Shown here: positions 4,001 to 62,200 of the stretch, piece by piece
Numbering within the stretch: position 1 is the first letter of the stretch
Layout of the letters: every line of letters starts with the position of its first letter
Assembly: GCF_003918875.1 (NCBI RefSeq)
Contig: NW_025766991.1
Coordinates: 2,790,001-2,854,000, forward strand
DNA length: 64,000 nt
Direction: 5' to 3'
Source: Haliotis rubra
Taxonomy: Eukaryota
Made by a program: the position numbers and the translations under genes
Notes under the pieces: generated by a model
Told to the model about the DNA's origin: nothing
The model's database searches: none
Seen by the model: only the letters and a program-made list of their open reading frames with translations

Positions 4001-7000
4001 TGTATGGCGGCGGTCTGTAAATAATCGAGTCTGGGCCAGACAATCTAGTGATCAACAGCATGAACATCGATCTACGCAATTGGGATACGATGACATGTGT
4101 CAACAAAGGCAGCGAGCCTGACCACCCGATCTGGTCTGTCGCCTTTTACGACAAGCATGTGTTGCTGAAGACCAATTCTATAACCCGGATCTTCACGGGT
4201 GCCATGTGAGCGAAATATTCTCAAGCACGACGTTAAACCCAATTTCACCTCACCTCACCTCACGGGTCCCATGTGGAGGAGGTACAACTCACCTTGAACC
4301 ACAGGGGCCTTCAATCTGTTCACGAACTCGTTTGTCAAACCTTCACCGAGCGGAGCTGCTCCACTGACGACATACTTCAAGTTGGACAGGTCAAACTTTG
4401 AGACTACGGGATGTTTGGCAAGAAACAGGATTATAGGAGGCACCGCGTGGAGAATGTTAATCTGTGGAATAATTGACACGTCATAAATTTTACGCAAGAT
4501 ATTTGCACGTGTTAAGTTTCCCTTTAATGAAATCGGGAGACAGGACGCAAAGAATAAGTGCTAGTTCCGGAACTAAACTGGTTTCCGGCTCCCTTTGCGC
4601 GCGCCAACTTGAGATATGCGAGACGGGGCCCGGCTTACTTCCGGTACCAGATTTCAGGTTCCAAATTGCGCGACCGCCAAATATGACTTTACTAGACCGG
4701 ACCAAGTGTACAACCATGCTTGGCTGTCACAGCTGTTGACAGTCGTAATAGTTGGCTAATTTGGGGATGGTTTGCAAGGATTATCGGTTCCTTGCTGTCA
4801 ACTAACAACTATGAGACCATTCGAAAAGGTATGAAGCGTTCTTTGTGAACGGAAGTACTAAGGTCTCGCGAAGTGCCTTGACCTTCTTACGGACCCTATA
4901 TCTAAAACCATTCGGAGATGGGTGCTTATAACTTAGGTCACAACATATCTTTTACAGACTATGACAGTATGTTTGTATGTTGTGTAACACCACATTCAAC
5001 AATATTCGAGTTATATGGCTGCGGTCCGTAAATAATCGAGTCAACAGCATGAGTACTTATCTACACAACTGGAAATCGATGACATGTACCATCCGATCCC
5101 TTTCGACGCATTTTACGACAAGCATGGGTTGCTGAAGACCAATTCTAAGCAGGATCTTCACGGGTTATGAAGGTATGAGTGAATGAGCATCATTTACCGC
5201 CGCTTTCAGCAATTTACATCAATTTTCGAAATTGGGTGCCAATCTTTTCAGAGACATTGGCTTATCTAGTTTGAGCGTATTTCTCTCTCCTTGGATGTAA
5301 TAATTTCATCCTCCGGTGGAATATGAGAGTTATACATTTAAGGGCATCACTTTTTTATGTGTTTCACGTAGCCACCAAATTCTGAACATGGGCCGGTCGG
5401 TCGGGGGAAGAAAACATAATAAAGACAAAATTATCCTAATAATGTTCTTGATTCTCAGTGATTGTAATTCTTAGTACAATTTATCGCGTTCTTTGGACTT
5501 GAGGCAGCAACTGATTAAATAAAACATCTTCAAAGATATACATTTTATATGACGAGGCGATACGTGTTAGGTTCGAGTCGGCGGTGTTGGATGAAGAGAA
5601 AATAATTGGGGGGGAGGGGCACATCAGTAACATTAGAATTGTCGGTCGGGCGATGAGAAACACAAAAAAATAAAAATGCTGCCCTAACTTTAAAAAGTCG
5701 ACTTTACGTCGCAATCACAGACTGGACTGTAAAGGTTCACATCACGATGTCTGGGATATCATGGCACGCCGAGTTTGATCTATTCACATCACAAAATAAG
5801 GCTACTTGAGTCTGCCTGCTTGGAGGCCTTAAAATGCATGGTATAATTGGTATACAGGGATGATGACATTTCATACCTTGTGTTTGTGTAGTGTAGTCAG
5901 GAACATTTCTGGATCAAAACGAGGCATTGTGTAGAGAGTGGCGCCATCTTGCAAAGCGCCAAACTGTATAGGTATCATACCGTATATATGATAGAATGGC
6001 AGCACGCCTATAAACTTGTCCTCCCCTTGCTCTACCTTCAGAGGTTTTCTGTAAGAACATATAAATGACAAAATTCTGTATACACTAATACAGATTTTAA
6101 GCAGATATATGCTAGAAGTTGAATGCGTAAGGTTTTACGCCTCTTTAAGCAATATCCCAGCAATATCACGGCGGGGAACACCAGAGTGAGTGAGTTAGGT
6201 TTTAGATATTCCAGCAATATCACGGCGGGGAACACCAGAGTGAGTGAGTTAGGTTTTAGATATTCCAGCAATATCACGGCGGGAACACCAGGAATAGGCT
6301 TCTCACATTGTACCCATGTGGGGAATCGAACCCAGGCCTTCAGCGTGATGAGCGAACACTTTAACCAATAGGCTACCCCATCACCCCTATGCTAGAAAGA
6401 AATGATAACTTGTAAGATCCATACTATAATTAATATAGAGTAAACTATGGTTATAACGAACTCAAGGCCACAACTACTTTTAGTTCGACATAACCGTAGT
6501 TTGTTATATGCATTTCGAATATAATATACAGCAAATGGCTAGGATGATGAAGGTTCTTTATCGAACACAGAGACGATTGGGTAGCCTAGTGGTTTAATCG
6601 TTAGCCCACCATGTCAAACGTCCGGGTTCTATTTGCTACCTTGATGGCAATTTATCCAATCCTCTACTGGAATTTGTACATTGCAATATTACTACTCGAG
6701 CTATTAAATCAGTGCATACTGAAATTTTATTCTCAGCTCCCTGAGGAGGATATAGCCTGTACGGTGCTCGAATATTATGGTTTTACGCCGCCTTTAGCAA
6801 TATACCAGTAATATCGCGTCGGGAACACCAGAAATTAGGCTTCACACATTGTACCCATGTGGGGAATCGAACCCGGGTCTTCCGCGTGACGAGCCAACGC
6901 TTTAACCACTAGGCTTCCCCATCGCCCCTAACATATATCGAGGTTAATTAATGTTTTAAACTAAATCTAACTTATACCGCGCACCGAATGGTCAAAATTC

Positions 7001-10000
7001 AATAAAATATTCCATATTTTGATCTTTAAACGACTAAACGCACGCACACACGTATGCATGCACAAAGACTACAGACGCACAGACGTACACACAGACACAC
7101 AGCACACACCTGATCTGGTTGAGGTTAGCTACACAGTTGTGGTGCGTCAACATGACGCCTTTAGGAAGGCCGGTGGTGCCACTGGAAAACGGGAGTAAGA
7201 GCACGTCGTCTATCGGGTTGACGTTGACGTTTTGAGGCAACGCTGCCCCATCGTCCTTCATGAGTTCGGAAACAGGTCGACATCCCTCTGCTTCACCCAG
7301 ACAAAACAGGTCCTGACAAACAAAGGAAGACGGAATAACAGTTATGAGATACTTAATTGAATAACGAACGTCTGAATATAATAATGACAATAATAATTAA
7401 AAACACATATGTACAGTACGCCAAATTCACACCCTAAAGCAGGCATATGTTTTCTCAGCTCAATGGGAAAATTAAAGGTTAAAAGTTACCTTACCACCTA
7501 GTTCTACAGTGTGCCAAGCCCCTACTGTGAATACAGGCATTTTTCGAACAAAGTCACTCTCCCAAGAAGGCAGCACGTGTAACATGTGCTTCTTTGAGAC
7601 GCAGGAAAGCCGAGATACTCTCTTGAGTCAATACACGGAACAGTGGGGTGGACTAGAACTTAAAGCGTTCGCTCGTCACACCAAAATCCCGATTTAGATT
7701 CCCCACATGGTCTCCCCCGCCGTGGATTATTGCTAAACGCGGCATAAAGATCACACAGTCACTCTTGAGACTGACGCATAGGGTTACCAGTGACCAGGGT
7801 TTTCAGTGACTGTGCGTTAGTCTAAGATACGGTTAGACTGCACACAACACAGGCTACTGCACACACAACACAGGCTACTGCACACAACACAGGTAGTCTG
7901 TCTCACAGTCCCTAAACCACATTAATTCCCCTACTGCCAAGCCCTCTCTGCAGTGCTAAAGCCTTAAATGAAGCAAGTCTAGATTTCCTCTGAATCTCTG
8001 GTCTCCCTAGGGCTCCTTTTCAATATAAATGGGCTTGTTTGTTACTATCAAAATTATACATATTCAGAGACTAAGCCTTAGTCTAACAACACAGGCTACT
8101 GCACACAACACAGGCTACTGCACACAACACAGGATCTTGAACGAGCTGGCTGATATGAAGACGTTAGAAAGAATTTTATTTCTACGCAAGCATGTGTCTC
8201 GTGGTCAATTTCACAAACAGCTACTGTTTGTCCTGGGACGAATCTCCAGGATACAACTAAAAATAAGTAAACCTACGAAGCCCAAATTACCGGTTACGAC
8301 AAATTCGTCTATGGCATGGGAACCCTCAACCATAATATTTTCTTTGAAAGGCATTTAGTAGTACGCATAAAGGGTACTCCCTCCCTTCATGATATATATT
8401 TTCTCCTCCGCCCATGGCTGTCAGCAATGCAAAACTCGGAATGAAGCAAGTCTAGATTTTCCTAAGGTTCGGGGTACTGAATCTCCTACCCCTCTTGGGC
8501 TTGTTTCTATCAAATTATATATGTTCAGAGACTCGGCGCTAGTCTACAAATGAACAACAGACTTACTGTATATTTTTCTTAGAAGAGATTTTGAAAACTA
8601 TACATTAGAGCTGTGCAGTCTTTGTATGTGTGCAATCAAGAAGTATGGTCAATGAGACGTACCCGTGATGATATACTCATACACAATATATACATACCTT
8701 GACGGCCCTCTGTACAATAGGTGAGGATGACAAAGCTTCTTTGACTGTTGGGACGAGAGGTGGGATGGTGAACACAGCCTTGGCCTTTGACATCTCCAAC
8801 TGGCGAGCTAACTCGCCTGCAGCACAGACATATATAAGTTATTTGCACATTAATTTGTCGGGTCGGGTATAGAAAGTGCCAGATGGAGCCGGCCGGGTAT
8901 AGTAACTGCAAGATGGAGCCGGTTGGATATAGAAAGTGCAAGATGGAGCCAGGTGGATGTGGAAAGTGCCAGATGGAGCCGTTCAGGTATAGAAAGCGCC
9001 AGATGGAGCCGGTCGGGTATAGAAAGTGCCAGATGGAGCCGGTCGGGTATAGAAAGTGCAAGATGGAGCCGGTCGGGTATAGAAAGTGCCAGATGGAGCC
9101 GGTCGGGTATAGAAAGTGCAAGATGGAGCCGGTCGGGTATAGAAAGTGCCAGATGGAGCCGGTCGGGTATAGAAAGTGCAAGATGGAGCCGGTCGGGTAT
9201 AGAAAGTGCCAGATGGAGCCGGTTGGGTATAGAAAGAGCCAGATGGAGCCGGTCGGGTATAGAAAGTGCAAGATGGAGCCGGTCGGGTATAGAAAGTGCA
9301 AGATGGAGCCGGTTGGATATAGAAAGTGCCAGATGGAGCCAGGTGGATGTGGAAAGTGCCAGATTGAGCCATTCAGGTATAGAAAGAGCCAGATGGAGCC
9401 GTTCAGGTATAGAAAGAGCAAGATGGAGCCGGTCGGGTATAGAAAGAGCCAGATGGAGCCGGTTGGGTATAGAAAGTGCAAGATGAAGCCGGTTGGGTAT
9501 AGAAAGTGCAAGATGGAGCTGGTTGGGTATAGAAAGTGCAAGATGAAGCCAGGTGGATGTGGAAAGTGAAAGATGGAGCTGAGTGCATGTAGAAAATGCA
9601 AGATGGACCCGAGTTAAAGAGGGAAGTGCAACGTGCAGCCCTCGAACGTTGATGGCATGACTTACCTGCAGTATATGCCGGGTTTGCCGGAGTGACGACC
9701 ATGCCGCACAACGCAGCTGCCAGGATCAGCATACAGTATTCCGGAACGTTGACGCTGAAGATGGCAATGACGTCGCCCTTAGTATAGCCAAGTCGAGTGA
9801 GGGCGCTTGCCACCTTGACGGCAGCCTCTTCTACTTCCGTGTACGTGTAACTGCGCCCCGTGGGTATATCGACCTGTATGAACAACACCAAAGTAGTGTT
9901 GGGAATTGGTTGAAATCTCACAATTGATGATTGCTTCATTACCAACGAACAATCATCGAAAAAAATTGGTTAGCGTCATTTTTCAGATTTTCCTATCCAG

Positions 10001-15726: not shown

Positions 15727-17000
15727 ACGTGTAGAGTGCGTACTTAAACACGTGTAGAAGGTTTACTTATTTATGTGTAGACACGTGTAGAGGGTTACTT
15801 ATTTATGTGTAGACACGTGTAGATGGTTTACTTATTTATGTGTAGACAGGTGTAGAGGGTTTACCTTTTTAAGTGTAGACTCATGTAGAGGGTTTACTTA
15901 TAGATGTGTAGACACGTGTAGAGGGTTTACTTATAGATGTGTAGACACGTGTAGAAGGTTTACTTATTTATGTGTAGACACGTGTAGAGGGTTTACTTAT
16001 AGATGTGTAGACACGTGTAGAAAGTTTACTTATTTATGTGTAGACACGTGTAGAGGGTTTACTTATTTATGTGTAGACACGTGTAGAAGGTTTACTTATT
16101 TAGATGTGTAGACACGTGTAGAGGGTTTTTATAGATGTTTAAGTGTAGACTCACGTGTAGAGGGTTTACTTATAGATGTGTAGTGTAGACACGTGTAGAG
16201 GGTTTACTTATAGATGTGACAGTGTACACACGTAGAAAGTTTACTTATAGATGTGTAGACACGTGTAGAGGGTTACTTATAGATGTGTAGACACGTGTAG
16301 AAGGTTTACTTATTTACTGTGTAGACACGTGTAGAGGGTTTACTTATAGATGTGTAGACACGTGTAGAGGGTTTACTTATAGATGTGTAGACACGTGTAG
16401 AGGGTTTACTTATAGATGTGTAGACACGTGTAGAGGGTTTACTTATAGATGTGTAGACACGTGTAGAAAGTTTACTTATAGATGTGTAGACACGTGTAGA
16501 GGGTTTACTTATAGATGTGTAGACACGTGTAGAAAGTTTACTTATAGATGTGTAGACACGGGTAGAGGGTTTACTTCCAAAATGTAAACACAATAGGATT
16601 ATCTCCATTCTACCGTGACATATGCACCATGAATAAAACGCGTTTTAAATATGCACTCATTGTCTTGCGTAGTGTTTTGACACTACGCGCAGTGAACCGG
16701 CTCTCAGAAGTGGTTATTGAAAAAATTTCACTTCTAATTTTTTAGTAACAACCAATCAAAAACGAACATACTTAAATGTCATGGTAGAATTATAGATGTG
16801 TAGACACGTGTAGAGGGTTTACTTATAGATGAGTAGACACGTGTAGAAAGTTCACTTATTTATGTGAAGACACGTGTAGAAGGTTTACTTATTTATGTGT
16901 AGACACGTGTGGAGGGTTTACTTATTTACGTGTAGACACGTGTAGAGGGTTCACTTATTTATGTGTGGGCACGTGTAGAGGGTATACTTTGAGGGTTTAC
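15727..17000. repeat. 33-bp minisatellite (ACACGTGTAGAGGGTTTACTTATAGATGTGTAG), interrupted at 16577-16790
   Basis: Tandem periodicity. Confidence 0.93.
16607..16790. mobile_element. MITE-like insert in the 33-bp satellite
   Basis: 15-bp TIRs ATTCTACCGTGACAT / ATGTCATGGTAGAAT (1 mismatch). Confidence 0.6.
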
Positions 17001-23608: not shown

Positions 23609-24738
23609 ACTAAACTTTTACAGGTCCGTTACGTAACACATTTATCTTATTTTATGGCACCAGTACTTAAATGAACCACTGTCATGATAATTAATTCTGA
23701 AGATTTCACATAAAAATACTTACATTTTGGTTTAGGAAATGTAACCAGTTGCACAGAGATCTTGAGGGCGAGTTTAGTCTCCTCCCGCGGGTAGCTGTTA
23801 CGTCTGCTTGTCTGACTGGGTGCAGGGTTAAGGCAAGTGGACTTTGACCGGTGCGCGTTGTGCTTCGTACCCCAGCTGATGTGTTGGGTCCCCACAGCGA
23901 ACTGGCAACCCACAAAAACAGTTGGAGGCGGTGAAGGATGCCTTCGTCACGGTCGAACTGTAGGGTTCAATGCCTGTTATAATTAAGGGCAGCTAGAAAT
24001 GTTCCGCGCGACCGGTTTCCTGTGAGAGTGTATACATGTTAAGTACACTGTTAACAGCTTCACTTGTGGTAATATATCTGTGTATATATAGCTTCCTACT
24101 GATGACTGGGACAAGGTAAGGATTTGTGAGAAGACGCCCGTGGGATTTCCGCGGGGCGGTCAGTGTGCATATATATTCCACTGTGCATGGGTGTAAACTG
24201 ACACTTAAATACACACGTGGGGACGACAACGCTCTGACACATAGAAAGGAAGAAAGTAGACTTGCACAAGTCTAAAGTAAAAATTAATAGTTTAAATGAT
24301 AATGTCTAAAAAATAATAAATAACAGACTGGGGGTTATGGCAATTGGACTATTCTTTAGCACGTATTGCGGTGGAGAAACCCTGTTTGTTCTGACTTGCA
24401 CAAGTCTTTAAGGTAAAGATTGAAAGTTTAAATGATAATTTCTAAAAGAAATAATCAATAGCAGACTAGGGTCCTTAGACTCTCCGCTTATCTAGACTTG
24501 CCCCTTCGAGGGATGGAATTACTATACGTCTGTTTGCAGTGAAAACGTACCGATGAATTTCACTTTAAACAACAAAATAACTCAAATGAAGTAAAATAAT
24601 ATTGCGAATCCTCGTAATTTTACCTTGCCAATTGAACATTTTAATCTCTTAATGCTTTAGGCGACTTAACAGTTCGGTGACAAGGTCGACTGAGTGGATC
24701 GCTGCTCCCAACCGCCGCCATATACTAGTAGCAGCAGG

Positions 24739-25090
24739 ACCGCCTCCGTGGTGTAGTGGTTAGAGCGTCCGCCCGGAGAGCGGAAGGTCGCGGGTTCGAT
24801 CCCCGACCGCGTCATACCAAAAGAGGTTAAAATATGGTACTTGTTGGTCCCTGCCTGGCGCTCGGCATTAATGGGTACAACAAGGACTGGTTGGCTCAGA
24901 GTCAGTATAATGTGTCTGAGTGGGGTATTCATGCTTCACTGCGGCATGGTACCTCAGTGGGCTAGCACTATAAAACCAGCTTAAGTCTGGGCTAGTACAA
25001 GCAGCCGCACATACACATAGACACGCATGCACGTCGTCATATGAGCGAAATATTCTCAAGTACGACGTTAAACCCAATTTCACCTCACCA
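24739..25090 (+). mobile_element. SINE family D (tRNA head, MetaSINE-like centre, (TCACC)n tail)
   Basis: A box TGGTGTAGTGG, B box GGTTCGATCCC, GTCATACCAAAAG...TGGTAC core; near-identical inverted copy at 57724-58076. Confidence 0.85.
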
Positions 25091-25599
25091 TATAGCAGAA
25101 TATTGCTAAGTGCGGCGTTAAACAACAACCAAACCTAACCGCTGCTCACAATATTGATCGCTTGAGTAACTCGGTTATTTCCGGCAGTGGTATTATTCAG
25201 CTAGAATAGTTCTCAAGGCACCGACAAACAACAACAAAAAAACTATGTCTTGACATATTCGGGAGAAAAACAGACAAAAGAGCTAAGTGCCTCCTTGGTC
25301 ATGGAGAAGTTTGGGTCACGCAGTTCGTTGTAGAACGACAGGGGTTGCGCTAGGCATGGTGGTGTATAAGAACGTGATATTTGACCTCAGTATTAGACTC
25401 GTGAAAAACGACATGGGTTAACACTTGTGCATGTGATGGGAACTAAAATGAAAATTAAGCATTTTTGAGGTAGTTTGTTTTACGTTTTGTCAAAAAGTTT
25501 GCATGCCAAACTGTTTTGTAACTTTGACGACACCTGATCTAGTAAAAGAACTATTCCAATCTTGGAGACATGGTTTTATTGACAAGCTTACCATTGCAC

Positions 25600-25830
25600 C
25601 TATATAGTAGCGTGCATGCGTGTGTGTTCGTTAGTTTGCGTGTGTGACTCTTGTTTTGTCAGTGGAACTACAGCGATAACCCACTGAGATACTACGGCTC
25701 AGTTTCAACACTGGAACTATACTCAGACACAGTTCTTGCTCACACATTTTCCTGGAGCGCAGGGTAACAACTACCACCTTTATACTCCTTTCGCATGGCA
25801 CGGCCCGGAGATCAACGTAACCCAGCACAC
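25600..25830 (-). mobile_element. Decayed body of a family-D-related SINE whose head forms the 42-bp satellite
   Basis: Collinear motifs on the minus strand: GGTAGTTGTTACCCTGC, TGTGTCTGAGT, GTATCTCAGTGGG, ACACGCATGCACG. Confidence 0.65.
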
Positions 25831-28600
25831 GCTCTATCCACTAGACCACGGAGGCGGTCTTCCCGGGTAGATGCCCTTTCCACTAGACCACGGAGGTGGT
25901 CTTCCCGGGCAGATGTTCTATCCACTAGACAATGGAGGTGGTCTTCCCGGGCAGATGTTCTATCCACTAGACCACGGAGGGGGTCTTCCCGGGCTGATGC
26001 ACTGTCCACTAGACCACGGAGGCGATCTTCCCGGGCAGATGGACTGTCCACTAGACCACGGTGGCGATCTTCCCGGGCAGATACACTGTCCACTAGACCA
26101 CGGTGGCGATCTTCCCGGGCAGATGCACTGTCCACTAGACCACGGAGGGTCTTCTTGCGCAGATGTTCTATCCACTAGACCACGGAGGGTCTCCGGGCAG
26201 ATGCACTGTCCACTAGACCACGGAGGGGGTCTCCGGCAGATGCACTGTCCACTAGACCACGGAGGCGATCTCCCGGGCAAAATGCACTGTCCACTAGACA
26301 ACGGAGGCGATCTTCCCGGGCAGATGCTCTATCCATTAGACCACGGAGGCAGTCTTCTTGTGCAGATGTTCTATCCACTAGACCACAGAGGGGGTCTCCG
26401 GGCAGATGCACTGTCCACTAGACCACGGAGGCAGTCTTCTTGTGGAGATGTTCTATCCACTAGACCATGGAGGGGGTCTCCGGGCAGATGATCTATCCAC
26501 TAGACCATGGAGGCAGTCTTCTTGTGGAGATGCTCTATCCACTAGACCACGGAGGCGGTCTCCCCGGGCAGATGCACTGTCCACTAGACAACGGAGGCGA
26601 TCTTCCCGGACAGATGCACTGTCCACTAGACCACGGAGGCGATCTTCCCGGACAGATGCAGAGTCCACTAGATCACGGAGGCGATCTTCCCCGGGCAGAT
26701 GCACTGTCCACTTGACCACGGAGGCGATCTTCCCGGGCAGATGCACTGTCCACTAGACCACGGAGGCGATCTTCCCGGGCAGATGGACTGTCCACTAGAC
26801 CACGGTGGCGATCTTCCCGGGCAGATACACTGTCCACTAGACCACGGTGGCGATCTTCCCGGGCAGATGCACTGTCCACTAGACCACGGAGGGGGTCTTC
26901 TTGCGCAGATGTTCTATCCACTAGACCACGGAGGGGGTCTCCGGGCAGATGCACTGTCCACTAGACCACGGAGGGGGTCTCCGGGCAGATGCACTGTCCA
27001 CTAGACCACGGAGGCGATCTCCCGGGCAAAATGCACTGTCCACTAGACAACGGAGGCGATCTTCCCGGGCAGATGCTCTATCCATTAGACCACGGAGGCA
27101 GTCTTCTTGTGCAGATGTTCTATCCACTAGACCACAGAGGGGGTCTCCGGGCAGATGCACTGTCCACTAGACCACGGAGGCAGTCTTCTTGTGGAGATGT
27201 TCTATCCACTAGACCATGGAGGGGGTCTCCGGGCAGATGATCTATCCACTAGACCATGGAGGCAGTCTTCTTGTGGAGATGCTCTATCCACTAGACCACG
27301 GAGGCGGTCTCCCCGGGCAGATGCACTGTCCACTAGACAACGGAGGCGATCTTCCCGGACAGATGCACTGTCCACTAGACCACGGAGGCGATCTTCCCGG
27401 ACAGATGCAGAGTCCACTAGATCACGGAGGCGATCTTCCCCGGGCAGATGCACTGTCCACTTGACCACGGAGGCGATCTTCCCGGGCAGATGCACTGTCC
27501 ACTAGACCACGGAGGCGATCTCCCCGGGCAGATGCACTGTCCACTAGACCACTGAGGCGATCTTCCCGGGCAGATGCACTGTCCACTAGACCACTGAGGC
27601 GATCTTCCCGGGCAGATGCACTGTCCACTAGACCACTGAGGCGATCTTCCCGGGCAGATGCACTGTCCACTAGACCACTGAGGCGATCTTCCCGGGCAGA
27701 TGCTCTATCCACTAGACCACGGAGGCGATCTTACCGGGCAGATGCAGTGTCCACTAGACCACGGAGGCGATCTCCCCGGGCAGATGCTCTCTCCACTGGA
27801 CCACGGAGGTGATCCTCCCGGGCAGATGCACTGTACACTAGACCACGGAGGCGATCTTCCCGGACAGATGCACTGTCCACTAGACCACGGAGGCGATCTT
27901 CCCGGGCAGATGCTGTATCCACTAGACCACGGAGGTGATCCTCCCGTGCAGATGCTCAGTCCACTAGACCACGGAGGCGGTCTTCCCGGGCAGATGCACT
28001 GTCCACTAGACCACTGAGGCGATCTCCCCGGGCAGATGCTCAGTCCACTAGACCACGGAGGCGATCTCCCCGGGCTGATGCTCAGTCCACTAGACCACGG
28101 AGGCGATCTCCCCGGGCTGATGCTCTCTCCACTAGACCACGGAGGCGATCTCCCCGGGCAGATGCACTGTCCACTAGACCCCGGAGGCGATCTCCCCGGG
28201 CAGATGCTCTGTCCACTAGACCACGGAGGCGATCTCCCCGGGCAGATGCTCTCTCCACTAGATCACGGAGGTGATCCTCCCGTGCAGATGCTCTCTCCAC
28301 TAGATCACGGAGGCGATCCTCCCGTGCAGATGCTCTGTCCACTAGGCCACGGAGGCGATCTCCCCGGGCTGATGTTCTGTCCACTAGACCACGGAGGCGA
28401 TCTCCCCGGGCTGATGCTCAGTCCACTAGGCCACGGAGGCGATCTCCCTGGGCAGATGCTCTCTCCACTAGATCACGGAGGTGATCCTCCCGTGCAGATG
28501 CTCTGTCCACTAGACCACGGAGGCGATCTCCCCGGGCAGATGCACTGTCCACTAGACCACGGAGGGGGTCTCCGTGCAGATGTCCTTTTCACTAGACAAC
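25827..28600. repeat. 42-bp minisatellite (CCACTAGACCACGGAGGCGATCTTCCCGGGCAGATGCACTGT), about 66 units, with a ~749-bp higher-order duplication
   Basis: Direct tandem periodicity; identical ORF translations at 26406 and 27155. Confidence 0.95.
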
Positions 28601-29650
28601 AGTGGCGGTCATGCAGTGTTGAGGATGATCCTTTTCCACATCTTTTCATGTTCAGTATTAATTATGCCCACACTGTCCACAATATATCACTATTAGACCA
28701 GATCTATATGTTTCAATGTTAACGCTTCGTGCAAGCCTAACTTAATATTCCACTATATACTAACAACATAACCAATGGCAAAGCAAGTGTATCGAAACCT
28801 GATTTTGATCTCTGTACAACTCAGGGTAAAACAGCTAAAACTGCTGCAAACATAAGATGAGTCAGCTGAATATCGTAAAAGACGGACTTAAAAATGTACT
28901 GAACGTAACTTGAAACTTTACATTTTATCGTGCCAGAGCTAAAATCTCGTAAAAGTGATACATAGCCAAACCTAACTGAAAACAAAACCAGTCGATTAGT
29001 GTTTGGAATTTGCAAACCACAATTTATAGTACAGCAAACAGGCTGTCCCCTTGTTTCCCTAACAGGCTGACGATTTGTATTCGCAAAGAGACGATTTCAC
29101 ATTTTAGAGTTCGATTTACGAGGCTTATAGTGAGTACGTGTGATTCGGAAGGTCAACGTGCCACAACGTTTTCACTGACTAAGCCAAAAGCTTCAAGCCA
29201 AATAGCATCATTAAATAAATCATATTTATATATGTTGCTATAGCAACTGACAGTACTGATGTCAGCTGCAGTTATAATTACTATAATAATATATTTTAAA
29301 GGTACTGTAATATAGTCCATCGGTCATTGATTTGAGTGTATATCTACGTATATACCAAAAACAGCTGGAAAGATCTCTATGGCTGAAGTCTGACAAATCA
29401 ACATAATAATAGCTTTCAGGCAACAATAATACACCGATAGATGACTTAGCATTACACTAAGCTGGCCGCATAGAGCTATGGGTAGAAGATTGGACAAAGA
29501 TTTGAAAAATCAGTATTAAAAATGTGAATAAAATATATTAGATGAAAAGTCATCATTCGCAAGTTCCAAGATAAGTAACCTACCGATACATGTTTCAATA
29601 TAGTTTTAACAGATAAAAAGTGTAAAATATTAACATCTTCCAATATATAC

Positions 29651-37609: not shown

Positions 37610-43208
<5,599 letters not shown>

Positions 43209-43993: not shown

Positions 43994-44242
43994 TATATTT
44001 AGTACATGACAAATCCCTACATAAACACACAGTAGTGATATAAATGGATATACAGAACAGTAAGACCCCGTCACCGAAATACCTTAGTTGTGCGTGCGAC
44101 GTTAAATAAAACAAATAACTAACTAGTAAGACCTTTGTCTGTTAGTATTATTTAAAAGCTGTGGAGTCCATGAAGTAACTACCAAAACATCGCAATGAAC
44201 AAATATTAATTTCCAAAGCTAAACCTGTTTCCATCAGTTAAT

Positions 44243-44432
44243 ATTTTGACATGGTCTGTGACACAGACGAATATGGACATGTTTAGAGCCATTTCTTAAA
44301 TCACGTTCTTCAGTATTTTGACATGGTCTGTGACACAGATAAATATGGACACATTTAGAGCCATTTCTTTAATCACATTCTTCAATATTTTGACATGGTC
44401 TGTGACACAGATGAATATGGATATGTTTAGAG
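44243..44432. repeat. 72-bp tandem repeat, about 2.6 copies
   Basis: ATTTTGACATGGTCTGTGACACAGA repeated three times. Confidence 0.85.
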
Positions 44433-47400
44433 CTTTATCATGGTGAATAATGATTTGATAGTACTATGCATCTTATCGCCACTTGGCACTGTTACCATGG
44501 TTACACCTGCCACTTTGACAAGGCTCTCTTTGATTAATGTGTTGTTTGGCATGCTAAAATGCAGTTGATAGTTACATAGTATGAATATTTGAAAAATTGT
44601 CTGTCAAAGTTCCACTGCCAAAGTGTAATTGTTATTAACTGTTCTATTTATTCTTTGAAAAAAAGTGTGCAATTTCAGTTTCAGTCATGATAATTACATT
44701 CATCTTTTCATTATTGTCCCAAACGATTTTGTTCAGTATTAAGGGGTATGTTTCAGCAGACATCATTTTGAATCCCTGCTGTATGTAAAGGCAAAGCCAA
44801 GGCACTAATGTTCTGCGATGGAAATGAAAATACATCAACTAACATTATTACCCGTTTTAGCTGTTCAAACACTATTCCATACACATTAGGATGAAAATAC
44901 CCTGACTGAGAATTCTGTCTCAGACATTTTCTGTAACTGGGATATAAAATGGAAATCCTAAACAATAATTTCTCAAAAGAGAAATTGGTCAAATCGAGTC
45001 ATTTTCTGTTTATGTAGCTGTGCATACAATTAGACTACATGCACACGTGGAATAATGACTGATCTGCTTACTTTTTGATCTGAAAATGGAGAGTCGCGTA
45101 TGATTTTGTTTTGTATTTGACATTGTAGTGTATAAAGTATTGTATGTAGCTTATTTACCTTTATATTAGTGTGGGTTTTTCTCATTTTTACCATCTTCAC
45201 AATAGGGCATGTTCAGTGTTGTTCCTCCTATAACCATATATCTGTAGATGTTGGGGTTTGTGCTGTATTTTACAGTGTGCTCTCTGTAGGTGCTGTTTAC
45301 TATGTTACACTGTATTGACTTTTCCTGTGATAACATAACCTCCTATTATTTTTCATATATTTCGGAGATAGGAGGCATTGTTACTTATCATCGAATAAGC
45401 TGTATGGATTGACATTCAGTGTTGTGAAAATCTCAATCTTGATGAATTGTACGATTACAGGACTTTATCCCTGTTGTGCCTATTCACACTTCACCTGCTG
45501 TCTTCACCAACAGTTTGTTTTTATAGAATTAAACCATGAAAAGATTAGTTCGCACATATGAACCATGTACAGAAAACCATCAATGACAGTATGTCACAAT
45601 GGGGGATATTTAGATGAGGAAAATATTTACAGCTACATCCACTTACACCACCACCACTCATAGCTCCCTGTACACCCACAACATCATGGCCCACCCTAAC
45701 ACCATCCTCGCCCCTATACCACCGCTAAAGTGTCAGTATCAGCAGATGATTTCTGATTTATCACTGCTTGTGGGAGCTGGACTTCAATCAGTATTAAAGT
45801 GTCGTCAATTAATTATGTTTTTCTACACTGGATTTCTCCACATTTCTGATAATAAAACAATTGCTATATCACATTTCTTAGTGAAGATAGACAAGAAGTG
45901 AGACCTCTTTTACAGAGTAAGATGGTTGTGAGTTTAAACTTCGTGTTACCCAAATGTTGTCATGTGTTAGCACAGTAATTTACATATAGCACTATTTTCC
46001 TATTCCAATGGTTGTTTTCACTGGTTATATACATGGTTTTATTAAGCCCATTTTTACCTCTACACTAATTTATCAGCCTTACAAAATCAAAATTTGGTGG
46101 AAGGTAATGGTCTTCCTAAATACACTTTATGCTGTATTTAGATTGTTAATTTTATGTATATTTTACCAACACTGTACAGACAATGAAATATTTGTACCGA
46201 ATGGTCACATTTGTTTTTTGGTATTAAACTAGTCAATGACACTAGTTATTAAAATACTTAATCACTAAGATTGATGTTTGTGGTGTGTGAAGCTCGTGTT
46301 GTTAGGACAACTACATTGATTCTTTGCTCTCTATAATTTGAAGTAGCCAGACATTGATACCCAATTTTCTCCAAGAACTGAATGGTACAGTTCCTCTTTT
46401 GCAAGCAACACTTCACACTGTTAAACTATAACGAACAAAATAAAGATACCTCATAATTGTTTTCTATATGTCAAACAACGGAAGAGAATACTTTACTTCC
46501 TGTTGCTGTACATCACTTGCTCGAATCACGAACAGAATGTTGGTGCACCTATAAACATTATTTGTCTCTAAAACGTGTCTTGTTACACATCCAAATGCAA
46601 GTCAAAAGTCACAATATTCTTGTGAGAAACTAAACTTTCAAAGAAATAAAGCCCAAAGTGGACACCATCTAAATCCAAGCGTCCCATAAAGAAGAGACGA
46701 CAGCTTGTTTCAGGGTTCAAAATGTGTCAGGAAAACAGGTTTTAATATCTCATCAAAGATACAATTACTTATATAATGTCATACAACAAAATACATGATG
46801 CTAAGCGAAATTCCACAAGAATACCAGGTGTCTAATTCCAATTAACATTGTTTTTTTAACCAGTTGTACTTCATCAAATGTTGTGTACCAGGCAACAACA
46901 TCTTGTGACCTCTTTCACGGACTTGAACTGTGATTGGTCCATCCACCTTTCGCTCTCCAAGCAGATGTTCTGTCCACTACAGTTGAAATGACAAGACTAT
47001 CACAGATAAAATCCAGGATTATATTTCAATTCTGCTGCTTATGGGGAAAATCAAGCAGCAGATCTGACACCACTTATTTCAACAGCTAACTCCAGATTTT
47101 CTTACATTAATTTAGGAAATATAATACAGATTGACATGAAAACAGACAACACGATATGAGACATAAATAGACAGTTTATTTTTCTATTATGGAATACCAT
47201 ACATCATACAACAGGCTTGAACCCATCAGGACATCAACTTTGACAACTTCTGGAATGGTGGGCAAACACATGCGTATCTGATAGTTGGACAGGAGTCCCC
47301 ATCAGAGACACCCCACCTTGTGTAAAGTTGAAGACTTTCTTTACTCAGTGTTCGAATCCCGAGAGAGAAACTGGGTTAGTTTGATTCAGTCTCACTATAG

Positions 47401-59200: not shown

Positions 59201-62200
59201 TCACTGAGTTTGGTTCCAATGAAGATGGGGAGGAGAAGATACGGAAGTAAGTTTCTTTGGCAACTGTTGTTACCATCAACCTTGTCTGAAGACAACATGA
59301 ACAATATAACTAATGTTGGCAAGGTACAGTCAAGAGTTATTTTAACATTTTTAAGGATCTTAATTTTATGGTAAGAAAGGCGGTTAAGTTGGTTCTCAGT
59401 GACTCGGTTAAAATTTAATGTTGTGACAAGTTCTCTTAAGGCGCCAGAGTCAAACCTTATTGAATTTTAGAGATAGGAAACGTAAAAAAAAGGACTTTAC
59501 TGAGGAGAGATTAGTGCAGAAATGAGCAATGCAGGGTTTTTTCAGTCCAAAGCGACTTATTTAGAACAGGCCATGGCTTTATGCAAATTAGTGTGCGATG
59601 ATATTGTGTTTCAAAGGACACTTTTTAAATGCCCATTTTGAAACTAGGCTTAGTATATTTTGCGTCAGCTATAGTTTATAAGAAAGCTAACTTTAATACT
59701 GAAACTATTAAGGATCTAGCTACCATGGAGCCTCACTATCACTATAAAAAAAACAGGTAGGAAGGGTCGTCTTAAAAGCAAAACCAGGATGAGTGTCACA
59801 GACGGTGGTGTGGGTCGTACTGGGGGATAGAGATATCAGCTAACATAAGATAATCCTCTTAGGGAAATTATACTGGGGGAAGTAAACGGCATGTCTTAAC
59901 AATTAACAAATAATATCCAGTTCTGTCGATATTGGGGTGGTCTTGCCACCTATATATTTTGAGACATTTAATACGATAGTTGATTTAAGCTTTTCTATGG
60001 GTATCATATTGTTAAACATTATAAAAGACGCGTAAGATGATAATCAATAGATCAGACATATTCAATACACATGAAAAAAGCATAAAATATCTTTGAGATG
60101 ACCCCTTATGCCTGTAGGTAGCATATGCATTTCATGCCAGGTGAGTCGACGGTCCGTCGTCATATCTGGCTGAGCCAACTCAGTGCCATCTATAGTCTGA
60201 TCTATTGTTTTCAGCAGCCGTTAGTATTTTTGCTAAGTTTTGCCCGATTTTACAAGTAAACATGCATTTCTAGATATCCTATTACACATCCCACTGAACG
60301 CCCAGTTAGGCCGATGTGGGTTATTTCAACATATGCTACTTGCAGTTGTGTAAATTTTAAGGATACAGAGTAACAGCCAAAAAACAGTTTTTTCCTATTT
60401 CAGACAGTACTTTAATAGTTTTGTACCTCTATTGTGAATACATGCTTCTTATTCGTGTTTCAGCTTAGTAATGTTTTTGTCAGAAGTATATTACGGTCTT
60501 TATTCAATGGCTGTTTGATTTGCCTAGACTTTATGAGAGGTCAATCACAGCAGCTGGCACTGACTTCCGCTCCGATAAACTCTGGGACTCCTATATATCC
60601 TGGGAAAATATGCGACACAACAAGAAGAAAGTGACACAGTTATACAAACGATTATTGTCAATTCCCACACAGCTATACAGCCATCACTATGACAAGTAAG
60701 TATGGGAGTTCAGAGTTGGTTTAAAAAAATCAGTGGAATTGTCTGTAAGAGCTAACAAACATTTCGATCAGATGGTCGAATGTGACCCTTGGCTTATTGA
60801 GTGTCATTGTACCTCCTTGGCATGGATCTTGGATCGTGATTTAACGATGAGTAGTCCACATTGATGAGAGTGCAGTATTCATCACTGTAGATCCTGCAGT
60901 GTCTGGTGAAAACATTCATCCCATTTGGGAATCCAGTTCCTGACATGACATGGCCAACCAATACCTAAACAATTAAAGGCACTATTCACATGTCCCTTTT
61001 GGCTTCAACTTTTGTTCAGTGATTGTTTTGGAAGGGTAACCTTGATGTGGGAGTTGTTACTGTTTGTCTGGTTTATACTTGAACTTGGAAGAGGCAATTA
61101 ATGGGATTGGGAGGTCAGATTCATTGTCCCCCACACAATGCAGAATGGGGACTATGTATTCAGCGGCGTCCGTCCGTACGCAGACACCAGTCGATTTGGG
61201 TGACCTTGACCTTATTTTCAAGGTCACCACGACACTTTGACCACCTTTCAAACTCTTGTTAACATGATATCTCATGCACTGTTGTATCCAATATCTTCAA
61301 ATTTGGTGACAGCCTACATTGGGGTATTACGCAGACACCAGTCGATTGGGGTGATTTGACCTTATTTTCAAGGTCACCACGACACTTTGAACACTTCACA
61401 AACTCTTGTTGACACGATATCTCATGCACTGTTTTGCCCAATGTCTTCAAATTTGGTGACAGCCTAAATTGGGGGATTATGCAGACACCAGTCTATTGGG
61501 GTGACCTTGACCTTATTTTCAAGGTCACCACGACACTTTGACCACTTTTCAAACTCTTGTTAACGTGATATCTCATGCACTGTTTCATCCAATATCTTCA
61601 AATTTGGTGACAGCCTACATTGGGGGATTATGCAGATACCATTCACTTCAGGCATCTTGTATGTAATCAAAAAATAAAAAGTAATAAATATAGATATTCC
61701 ATTCTTTAGCGGCGGGGGACATTGCCATATCAGTGGCAAACACTTGTTGACTTTGTGGGCACATTTCATCGTATCCCAGTTGTGTAGATAGTGCTCATTA
61801 TGTAAATCACTGGATTATCTCATCCAGACTTGATTATTTACAGACTACATCATATAGCTGCAATATTACTTAGTGTGACATTAAACATGTTAAACAACAA
61901 CAAAATCCTACGTGGTAACTTCCACAACTTCCATCAGTCCAATCATAGTATGTCAGAAACATTTCTGATATGATTTAGTATGTAAACTAGAAAAGTCCAT
62001 TAGATAACAGCAGATTCATTTCAATAAACAACCTGTTTCAGTTTCAAGAAGCATGTTATGGAAAACCACCCAAAGGATATCTTGAGTCTGGATGAGTTCT
62101 TGAAGTTGCGGCAAGAGGTTGTCAAGGCCGGCACTGTGAAGGTAGATGAGGAGGATGCTGGTGCTGAGGTCCCACCTGGGGAGGATGCACCCCCTGGTGT

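What the first reader, a model, noticed from the sequence alone, without database searches (positions are those of the whole stretch)
25600..28600. A 2.8-kb satellite that is the tandemly amplified head of a SINE, still attached to its body
Seen: the reverse complement of the 42-bp unit (GATCGCCTCCGTGGTCTAGTGGATAGAGCATCTGCCCGGGAA) matches the first ~40 nt of SINE family D at 24739 (ACCGCCTCCGTGGTGTAGTGGTTAGAGCGTCCGCCCGGAGA). On the minus strand the last unit runs straight into a decayed family-D body (25830 to 25600) with four collinear motifs. So about 66 Pol III A-box modules without B boxes are stacked upstream of one SINE body. Inference: this captures a satellite arising from a tRNA-derived SINE promoter half. 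It may act as a TFIIIC/insulator array. An intact family-D copy lies about 0.5 kb away in the opposite orientation, so a read-through transcript could form dsRNA.
Basis: partly seen in the sequence, partly recalled or inferred. Interest (0 to 1): 0.75.

Follow-up and report, generated by a model that had tools for sequence, protein, structure and literature searches.

The report
Minisatellite grown from a SINE head
A 2.8-kb block of 42-base repeats is the front end of a common jumping element (a tRNA-derived SINE) copied about 66 times beside its own worn-out body. The same has happened at about two dozen other places in this (abalone-like) genome, so it shows clearly how satellite DNA is born, but nothing suggests it has a function.

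Summary
TRF finds a 42-bp x 66 array at 25837-28597. A profile of 30 genomic copies of SINE "D" matches every unit at SINE positions 2-43 on the minus strand. The last unit runs into a decayed, near full-length copy (25859-25571, E=1.2e-17).

The family (~355 bp, A and B boxes, (CACCT)n tail) fits the published Haliotis MESC SINE. The pattern recurs: of 27 head arrays examined, 15 abut a SINE body in the right place and orientation, with periods of 23-47 bp. Nearly all units start at the SINE's 5' end. Body and B-box segments almost never form such arrays.

Four young arrays lie with their bodies inside 11-12-bp target-site duplications. In one array, and probably a second, the unit contains target-site DNA, so that duplication arose in genomic DNA after insertion. 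An 18-unit block duplicated at 99.3% identity shows growth by unequal exchange.

Contigs from two other coded organisms carry array junctions, so the locus is old.

The TFIIIC/insulator idea is weak: no unit has a B box. The dsRNA idea is also weak: complementary stretches are at most 39 nt. This is a mollusc counterpart of the SINE-derived satellites described in squamates. Another first-stage note (s1-344995) reports a similar array elsewhere in this genome.

The parts
25860..28610 (-). 66 head-only repeat units (mostly 42 nt, some 40 nt), each equal to positions about 1-42 of the SINE head (acceptor 5' strand, D arm/A box, 5' side of the anticodon arm)
   Evidence: TRF; per-unit nhmmer hits to profile positions 2-43; unit table with 51/66 A-box and 0/66 B-box
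25571..25859 (-). Decayed, near full-length SINE copy. Its own head (25818-25859) is the last, 67th unit of the array. It has internal deletions and a degenerate B-box region.
   Evidence: nhmmer profile positions 2-340 of 358, E=1.2e-17, alignment; pairwise alignment; no close copy elsewhere in the genome
26028..26771 (-). Block A of an internal 18-unit segmental duplication
   Evidence: 744 of 749 positions identical to block B; paired equal-score hits 749 bp apart
26772..27520 (-). Block B of the internal 18-unit segmental duplication
24737..25089 (+). Neighbouring intact young copy of the same SINE family (tRNA-like head, body, (CACCT)n tail). It is convergent with the decayed copy and is an independent insertion, not part of the array.
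   Evidence: nhmmer E=1.7e-138; Rfam tRNA 28 bits; 97-99% identical copies genome-wide

Best explanation
The array is a minisatellite born from one inserted copy of an abundant tRNA-derived SINE, which fits the Haliotis MESC-type family. I propose three steps.

1. A short microhomology-mediated tandem duplication arose in genomic DNA at the 5' end of the inserted element. It covered the first ~42 nt: the 5' acceptor strand, the D arm/A box and the 5' side of the anticodon arm. This step is inferred for this locus. It is shown directly at a younger sister locus.

2. The duplicate was expanded and partly homogenised by unequal exchange or replication slippage, up to 66 extra heads. This step is shown by 40+42-nt dimer patterns and a 99.3% identical 18-unit block duplication.

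3. The attached body and the array then decayed together. The locus is shared with other coded organisms.

The 5' A-box part of this SINE is a recurrent seed for such arrays in this genome, with at least 8 different period/junction classes. The cause of this hot spot is unknown.

The array most likely has no function of its own. The units are A-box-only and cannot form a complete Pol III promoter.

My odds: SINE-head origin 0.95; post-insertion DNA-level birth and growth 0.65; no sequence-specific function 0.75.
For: Origin: all 66 units match profile positions 2-43, and the last unit continues into a SINE body with E=1.2e-17.

Recurrence: 15 of 27 arrays examined abut a family-D body on the 3' side, in the same orientation and register (E from 5.9e-6 to 8.8e-132). 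Under a generous 1% chance rate the binomial P is 1.6e-23.

Private periods: 23, 29, 34, 35, 38-40, 42, 43, 45, 46 and 47 bp. The 46-bp type occurs at one locus only.

Post-insertion birth: at C2169 the 45-bp unit is made of 4 nt of upstream flank, the whole 12-bp target-site duplication, GT and SINE positions 2-28. The same 12-mer follows the (CACCT)n tail, and GAGC microhomology lies at the join. At C25 the 47-bp unit carries 5 nt that match the 13-bp target-site duplication, which agrees at 10 of 13 positions. C979 and C2411 arrays lie with their bodies inside 12-bp duplications, perfect and 11/12 respectively, and their first units are complete.

Growth at DNA level: blocks 26028-26771 and 26772-27520 are 744/749 identical. 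There are alternating 42/40-nt variants here and a 46/45 dimer at C1924.

Head specificity: tandem pairs of a head 12-mer at 32-48 bp spacing number 628 genome-wide, against 7 for the reversed control. More than 100 of the 628 come from one array on contig C4 built on a different tRNA-like unit. A body 12-mer gives 0 and a B-box 12-mer gives 1. A body 16-mer gives 2 single duplications, against 23 pairs in 4 arrays for the head 16-mer.

Age: contigs of organism B (about 97% identity) cover 25451-25865 and 28553-29100. A contig of organism C (about 92%) covers 25244-25885.
Against: No target-site duplication could be found around the window's own element, so its in-situ birth is inferred by analogy with younger loci.

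At C1924 a perfect 11-bp target-site duplication abuts a partial first unit. In-situ duplication alone does not explain this.

About ten 40-bp arrays, and the 40-nt units inside this array, share the same join. The window array could therefore descend from a dispersed array-bearing element rather than being born here.

Neither short direct repeats nor hairpin potential explains why the head in particular is amplified.

Lack of function is argued from missing B boxes and decay, not measured. The block duplication could in principle be an assembly error.
Confidence: 0.7

Rival explanations
1. The array was seeded at the RNA/cDNA level during retrotransposition. On reaching the 5' end of the SINE RNA, the LINE reverse transcriptase switched back to an internal site (or onto another SINE RNA) and recopied the first ~40 nt. 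The element was therefore inserted with a partial or multiple head, which DNA-level processes later expanded.
For: In nearly all arrays the unit joins position ~28-48 back to SINE position 1-6, so it is anchored at the RNA 5' end. At C1924 a perfect 11-bp target-site duplication directly abuts a partial unit that starts at about position 29, as expected if extra head sequence was already present at integration. Arrays plus bodies lie inside target-site duplications.
Against: At C2169 the unit contains the complete target-site duplication plus 4 more upstream bases. At C25 it probably contains 5 target bases. Neither can come from SINE RNA. Dimer patterns and the 99.3% identical block duplication show DNA-level growth. 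C2201 has a unit in a different phase, about positions 10-59.
Confidence: 0.15
2. The window array is one copy of a dispersed array-bearing element: a SINE subfamily or composite element that already carried a 40/42-bp multi-head array and spread by retrotransposition or segmental duplication. It was not born at this locus.
For: At least ten arrays (C2193, C213, C890, C447, C2099, C126, C185, C1791, C2185, C1557) have a 40-bp period with the same join and share the GGATAGAGC variant. The window array holds 8 such 40-nt units, and its 42-nt unit differs only by 2 nt at the join. The first unit at C890 is truncated by about 7 nt.
Against: Identity between arrays is only 66-77%, so there is no sign of recent spread. 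Heads without B boxes give no Pol III route to transcribe kilobase arrays (inference). Other classes are clearly private to one locus. First units at the window, C2193 and C213 are complete.
Confidence: 0.12
3. One reading: the stacked A boxes act as a TFIIIC/Pol III binding array (insulator), or the locus yields dsRNA by read-through with the inverted intact copy.
For: 51 of 66 units keep an A-box-like motif. An intact copy lies 482 bp away in convergent orientation. The junctions and first units at both array ends are retained in at least two other coded organisms.
Against: No unit has a B box. The attached body's B-box region is degenerate. Units have diverged to 87% with frame-free indels and CpG decay. 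Complementary arms are at most 39 nt. No run on record as RNA holds the stretch. Sister arrays differ in period and sequence, as expected for neutral minisatellites.
Confidence: 0.05
4. It is not SINE-derived: a satellite derived directly from a tRNA gene, a coding 14-residue repeat (42 = 3 x 14), or an assembly artefact.
For: Open frames of up to 228 codons run through the array on both strands. The unit is tRNA-like.
Against: The last unit continues into a SINE body, not a tRNA 3' half. 12 of 66 units have lengths that break any reading frame. There are no Pfam matches. Independent contigs from other runs confirm the junction with the body and the outer array end.
Confidence: 0.02

Closest known systems
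SINE-derived satellites (sSats) of squamate reptiles (Vassetzky, Kosushkin & Ryskov 2023, PMC10702118)
   Same: Both are tandem repeats made from a portion of a tRNA-derived SINE, with a longer terminal unit that continues to the SINE terminus. Both have many loci per genome, locus-specific alternating subvariants, and independent origins from different SINE portions.
   Different: That work is in vertebrates, with units of 67-215 nt that often include the B box, body or LINE-derived region, and thousands of loci in some species. Here the host is a mollusc, units are 23-47 nt, and they are almost always the 5'-terminal A-box part. A few dozen loci are seen. Some units contain target-site DNA, which fixes those births to after insertion.
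PcH-sat of the limpet Patella caerulea, related to Nin-SINE (PMC11121367)
   Same: A gastropod tandem repeat with a segment homologous to a SINE.
   Different: PcH-sat is a 179-bp pericentromeric satellite making up to 10% of the genome. Its homology is to a 118-bp SINE segment, and no attached SINE bodies or target-site duplications are described.
tRNA-like tandem families of amphibians (PolIII/TAN, Xenopus satellite 1/OAX, Rana/polIII, Hy/polIII), as reviewed in PMC10702118 and PMC9659126
   Same: Tandem repeats that contain tRNA-related sequence.
   Different: Their units are 200-750 bp, and the reviewers find no demonstrated parent SINE. Here the parent SINE is present both as dispersed copies and physically attached.
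Haliotis MESC-superfamily SINE (Matetovici et al. 2016, PMC4758252)
   Same: The parent element has a tRNA-derived head with A and B boxes, an internal (CA)n-like stretch and a (CACCT)n tail, as described for Haliotis MESC SINEs.
   Different: In the passages I searched, that paper reports a (CA)n expansion inside the SINE and no head arrays.
Mouse B1-derived unstable VNTR family (Bois et al. 1998, as listed in PMC9659126)
   Same: A minisatellite expanded from a short motif inside a SINE.
   Different: Its unit is a 6-nt motif, not a 40-nt promoter half. I know it only from the review table.

Membership tests
SINE-derived satellite (sSat sensu Vassetzky 2023) | Head-to-tail units homologous to part of a SINE that also exists as dispersed copies in the same genome | tested here: met
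   Units match profile positions 2-43. The exact head 16-mer occurs 16,774 times in the genome, and the best 40 copies are 97-99% identical.
SINE-derived satellite (sSat sensu Vassetzky 2023) | Terminal unit extended into the rest of the SINE up to its terminus | tested here: met
   25859-25571 matches profile positions 2-340 of 358, E=1.2e-17. The same holds at 14 other arrays.
SINE-derived satellite (sSat sensu Vassetzky 2023) | Multiple loci per genome | tested here: met
   27 arrays examined, and more listed but not examined.
SINE-derived satellite (sSat sensu Vassetzky 2023) | Satellite-like chromosomal location (subtelomeric or heterochromatic) | not testable with these tools
   The assembly is in 2855 contigs with no chromosome map. 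Arrays of 0.1-5 kb are of minisatellite scale.
Haliotis MESC SINE | tRNA-derived head with A and B boxes | tested here: met
   Rfam tRNA 28 bits over model positions 1-71, gathering score 29. A- and B-box motifs are readable.
Haliotis MESC SINE | (CACCT)n terminal repeat and internal (CA)n stretch | tested here: met
   Alignment of 30 copies, compared with the description in PMC4758252.
Haliotis MESC SINE | MESC central conserved domain | not tested
   No reference MESC sequence was on hand, so the assignment rests on the head, tail and (CA)n features only.
Complete type-2 Pol III promoter (tRNA-like gene) | A box plus B box in each unit | tested here: not met
   A box in 51/66 units, B box in 0/66.
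Extra-TFIIIC (ETC) / TFIIIC insulator site | B-box motif, the high-affinity TFIIIC site (established knowledge) | tested here: not met
   0/66 units have a B box. The attached body's B-box region is degenerate. Binding itself was not testable.

The most novel reading that the evidence does not exclude
The 5' junction and A-box region of this Pol III-type SINE is an intrinsic hot spot for minisatellite birth. One possible cause is that a bound Pol III initiation complex stalls replication forks and provokes microhomology-mediated template switching over about -20 to +48. Added A boxes might then reinforce the effect. If so, active SINE promoters would act as a systematic, sequence-defined source of new satellites.
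Probability: 0.2. Interest if true: 0.7.

Novelty: new member of a known kind. Interest (0 to 1): 0.42.

Why it matters
How satellites arise from unique or dispersed DNA is usually inferred after the fact. This genome holds a graded series at one SINE family: 2, 3, 9, 29, 32 and 66+ heads. Bodies and target-site duplications are still attached. One unit contains the target site itself, which places that first duplication after insertion and at the DNA level.

It extends SINE-derived satellites from squamates to molluscs. It also shows a strong positional bias toward the 5' A-box part that current models (random duplication, the library hypothesis) do not predict. For annotation, these arrays should be masked as SINE-derived minisatellites and not read as tRNA gene clusters or Pol III regulatory arrays.

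Tried and rejected
1. Hairpin-driven expansion. DNA folds of unit trimers are no better than shuffles for the window array (z -0.6 and -0.4), C25 (-0.7), C2169 (-0.5) and C979 (+1.8). Only the native head 1-48 (z -2.7) and C1924 (z -2.0 to -2.7) fold well.

2. Head enriched in short direct repeats. The head has one 5-mer pair at 20-50 nt spacing, equal to the shuffle expectation. The body has an 8-mer pair and yet forms no arrays.

3. Target-site duplication around the window element: none found.

4. Coding repeat: there are no Pfam hits, and units of 38, 39, 40 and 43 nt break every reading frame.

5. A younger source family closer to the unit. The 91-95% single hits are ordinary family-D heads with CpG decay. 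The decayed body has no close relative in the genome.

6. Full census of array loci. Pattern listings are cut at 100 rows and were filled by one array on contig C4.

7. Expression. No run on record as RNA holds the stretch, and all runs laid were contigs.

8. Prior description in molluscs. Three full-text searches found none for SINE-head arrays. This is a limited search, not proof of absence.
Full report
**1. What is in the window**

TRF reports a 42-bp array at 25837-28597 with 66.2 copies, 87% matches and score 3722; the sequence is. About 0.8 kb to the left lies a tRNA-like retroposon. Rfam tRNA scores 28 bits over the full model at 24742-24814, where the gathering score is 29. ARAGORN calls no tRNA gene in the window.

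A search of the window's own assembly (G000, 1.378 Gb, 2855 contigs) found more than 1,600 first-look candidates for this element. The 40 that were scored are 97-99% identical. Aligning 30 copies with their flanks fixes the element at about 355 bp. It has a tRNA-like head with A and B boxes, a body, a CA-rich stretch, a conserved 3' region and a (CACCT)n tail.

These features are the ones published for Haliotis MESC-superfamily SINEs (PMC4758252). An earlier follow-up note of this scan also calls the genome abalone (s1-344836). From memory, and therefore unverified, the assembly size and contig number resemble a published blacklip abalone assembly.

**2. Testing the observation**

I built an nhmmer profile from the 30 copies and ran it on the window.

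- It finds the intact copy at 24737-25089 (+), E=1.7e-138.
- It finds a second intact copy at 58076-57725 (-).
- It finds a decayed, near full-length copy at 25859-25571 (-), covering profile positions 2-340 of 358 with E=1.2e-17. This copy has deletions of 11+3 nt in the anticodon/T-arm region and about 23 nt in the body.
- It hits every array unit separately on the minus strand, at profile positions 2 to about 43.

The head of the decayed copy (25818-25859) is in register with the array and forms its last unit. So there are 66 head-only units (25860-28610) plus one head attached to a body. 51 of the 66 units keep the A-box pattern TRGYNNAGTGG and none has a B box.

**3.

A search with 421 bp of the array found arrays on more than 20 other contigs at 64-77% identity. 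It also found single 42-bp hits at 88-95%; these are heads of ordinary dispersed copies carrying CpG-decay variants.

I then scanned them with the profile and TRF. Of the 27 arrays examined:

| Result | Loci |
|---|---|
| Family-D body directly 3' of the array, same orientation and register (15) | window, C291, C890, C1202, C2136, C1924, C447, C669, C2099, C1380, C2201, C25, C2169, C2411, C979 |
| Weak traces of a body (2) | C2193, C1557 |
| No body detected (10) | C213, C2423, C2200, C2228, C126, C185, C472, C2223, C1791, C2185 |

The E-values for the attached bodies range from 5.9e-6 to 8.8e-132. With a generous 1% chance of such an adjacency, 15 of 27 has P = 1.6e-23. The association with SINE bodies is therefore real. 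The loci without a body are old arrays in which the body may have decayed or been lost.

**4. Many births, one place in the element**

The periods differ between loci: 23 bp (C979), 29 (C2423), 34 (C2411), 35 (C291), 38-40 (about twelve loci), 42 (window), 43 (C2201), 45 (C2169, C2200), 46 (C1924) and 47 (C25). The 46-bp type occurs at one locus only.

In nearly all arrays the unit joins position ~28-48 back to position 1-6, the 5' terminus of the SINE. The exception is C2201, with about positions 10-59. All units contain positions about 6-28, the A-box/D-arm region.

Genome-wide counts of tandem pairs at 32-48 (12-mers) or 32-50 (16-mers) bp spacing show the bias:

| Probe | Tandem pairs |
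|---|---|
| Head 12-mer | 628 (reversed control 7) |
| Body 12-mer | 0 |
| B-box 12-mer | 1 |
| Exact head 16-mer (16,774 single occurrences in the genome) | 23, in 4 arrays |
| Body 16-mer | 2, both single duplications |

More than 100 of the 628 head-12-mer pairs come from a single array on contig C4 that is built on a different tRNA-like unit. The 5' A-box part is thus specifically what grows into arrays.

**5. How the arrays arise**

Young loci with intact target-site duplications are informative.

- **C2169**. The 45-bp unit consists of 4 nt of upstream flank, the whole 12-bp target-site duplication, GT and SINE positions 2-28. The same 12-mer follows the (CACCT)n tail. GAGC occurs both in the flank and at SINE positions 25-28, at the join. 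A unit that contains target DNA cannot come from SINE RNA. This duplication therefore happened in genomic DNA after insertion, through microhomology.
- **C25**. The 47-bp unit carries 5 extra nt that match the end of a 13-bp duplication, which agrees at 10 of 13 positions. This probably tells the same story.
- **C979 and C2411**. The arrays (23 bp x 29 and 34 bp x 3) lie with their bodies inside 12-bp duplications, perfect and 11/12 respectively. Their first units are complete.
- **C1924**. This is the exception. A perfect 11-bp duplication abuts a partial first unit that starts near position 29. That would fit a 5' template switch at retrotransposition, or a later deletion. I leave it unexplained.

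Growth after birth is at the DNA level. In the window, blocks 26028-26771 and 26772-27520 (18 units each) are identical at 744 of 749 positions. 42+40-nt dimer patterns occur in the window array, and C1924 is built of 46/45-nt dimers.

For the window array itself no target-site duplication survives. Its first unit is complete.

**6. Why the head? Ideas tested and rejected**

- Hairpin potential is not shared by the arrays.
- Short direct repeats are not enriched in the head.

Two ideas remain open and are inference only. One is fork stalling at a Pol III initiation complex. By my own knowledge tRNA genes are replication-fork pause sites in yeast, and the duplicated span of about -22 to +48 roughly matches the footprint of such a complex. 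The other is instability left by repair of the 5' junction after retrotransposition.

A further open point concerns about ten 40-bp arrays, and the 8 units of 40 nt inside the window array, which share the same join. These could be recurrent births, or descendants of one dispersed array-bearing element.

**7. Age and independent support**

All runs laid on 24600-29100 were Logan contigs.

- Organism B has contigs at about 97% identity over 25451-25865 (unique flank, body and junction) and over 28553-29100 (the two outermost units plus flank).
- Organism C has a contig at about 92% identity over 25244-25885 (flank, body, attached head and part of the next unit).

The array is therefore older than the split of these coded organisms, and at least its ends are not an assembly artefact. 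Array length and copy-number polymorphism could not be measured from contigs.

**8. The functional suggestions**

Units lack B boxes and the attached body's B-box region is degenerate. By established knowledge TFIIIC is recruited mainly through the B box. An A-box-only array is therefore a poor candidate for TFIIIC binding or insulation.

Complementarity between the intact neighbour and the array locus is limited to arms of 31-39 nt at 79-94% and 35 nt at 74%. Long dsRNA is unlikely.

No run on record as RNA holds the stretch. Open frames through the array are a by-product of the 42-nt period; there are no Pfam matches, and 12 units break any frame.

**9. Comparison with what is known**

The closest described phenomenon is the SINE-derived satellites of squamates. 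These are tandem repeats from portions of tRNA-SINEs, with a longer terminal unit running to the SINE terminus. They have many loci, alternating subvariants and independent origins (PMC10702118).

In gastropods, PcH-sat of Patella shares a 118-bp segment with Nin-SINE (PMC11121367). Older amphibian tRNA-like tandem families lack a demonstrated parent SINE.

I found no description of SINE-head arrays in molluscs in three searches. This is a limited search. Another first-stage note of this scan (s1-344995) reports a similar 3.3-kb array elsewhere in this genome, which agrees.

**10. Verdict**

The feature is real and well explained. It is a mollusc member of a known kind, the SINE-derived tandem repeat. 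It adds two points of value. It shows a strong bias to the 5' A-box part. It also includes loci where the unit contains target-site DNA, which fixes the birth to after insertion. The functional readings are not supported.

Noticed in passing
G000 contig C4, about 78406-82958 and beyond: A very homogeneous 43-bp array with more than 100 units. The unit contains the same D-loop 12-mer but otherwise differs from family D, so it is probably the head of another tRNA-like SINE family.
   Followed up: partly
L095 (G000 C1924:431400-434400), minus strand: A 46/45-bp dimeric head array (about 32 units) plus a full young SINE body lies between perfect 11-bp target-site duplications. The unit next to the 5' duplication is partial, starting near SINE position 29. 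In-situ duplication alone does not explain this.
   Followed up: partly
L096 (G000 C2169:250100-251700): The SINE copy attached to the 45-bp array lacks positions about 36-85 (anticodon arm to B box and T arm). The repeat unit includes the whole target-site duplication.
   Followed up: yes
L064 (G000 C2136:818000-822500); also the joints 25089 to 24738/24739 in read laying: Full-length SINE D copies occur as head-to-tail tandems and clusters. Contigs from several runs show the tail-to-head joint (11 contigs in X1 and 19 in X3 at the 25089-to-24738 joint alone).
   Followed up: no
window 58076-57725 (-), 4199-4255 (+), 10486-10339 (-), 46981-46878 (-): A second intact family-D copy, an isolated D tail fragment, and several weaker tRNA-SINE head/body matches, probably from other SINE families.
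   Followed up: no
window 8861-9611, 15748-16576, 16796-16989: Other minisatellites of 30 bp x 25 and 33 bp x 25 (+6) of unknown origin. Fetched loci elsewhere also hold many 19-66-bp arrays, so this genome seems generally rich in minisatellites.
   Followed up: no
window 39802-40296, 44240-44433, 61180-61641: Short arrays with long units: 165 bp x 3, 72 bp x 2.7 and 151 bp x 3.
   Followed up: no
L098 (G000 C979:1055400-1057000): The array-bearing SINE D copy is inserted inside an older SINE-like element of a different family. That element's tRNA-like head and MESC-like core lie upstream, and the rest of its body lies downstream of the target-site duplication.
   Followed up: no
window 25094-25132: Directly after the intact D copy's tail lies a fragment resembling the D 3' region. 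Many contigs start or end a different repeat at 25098 and 25132.
   Followed up: no
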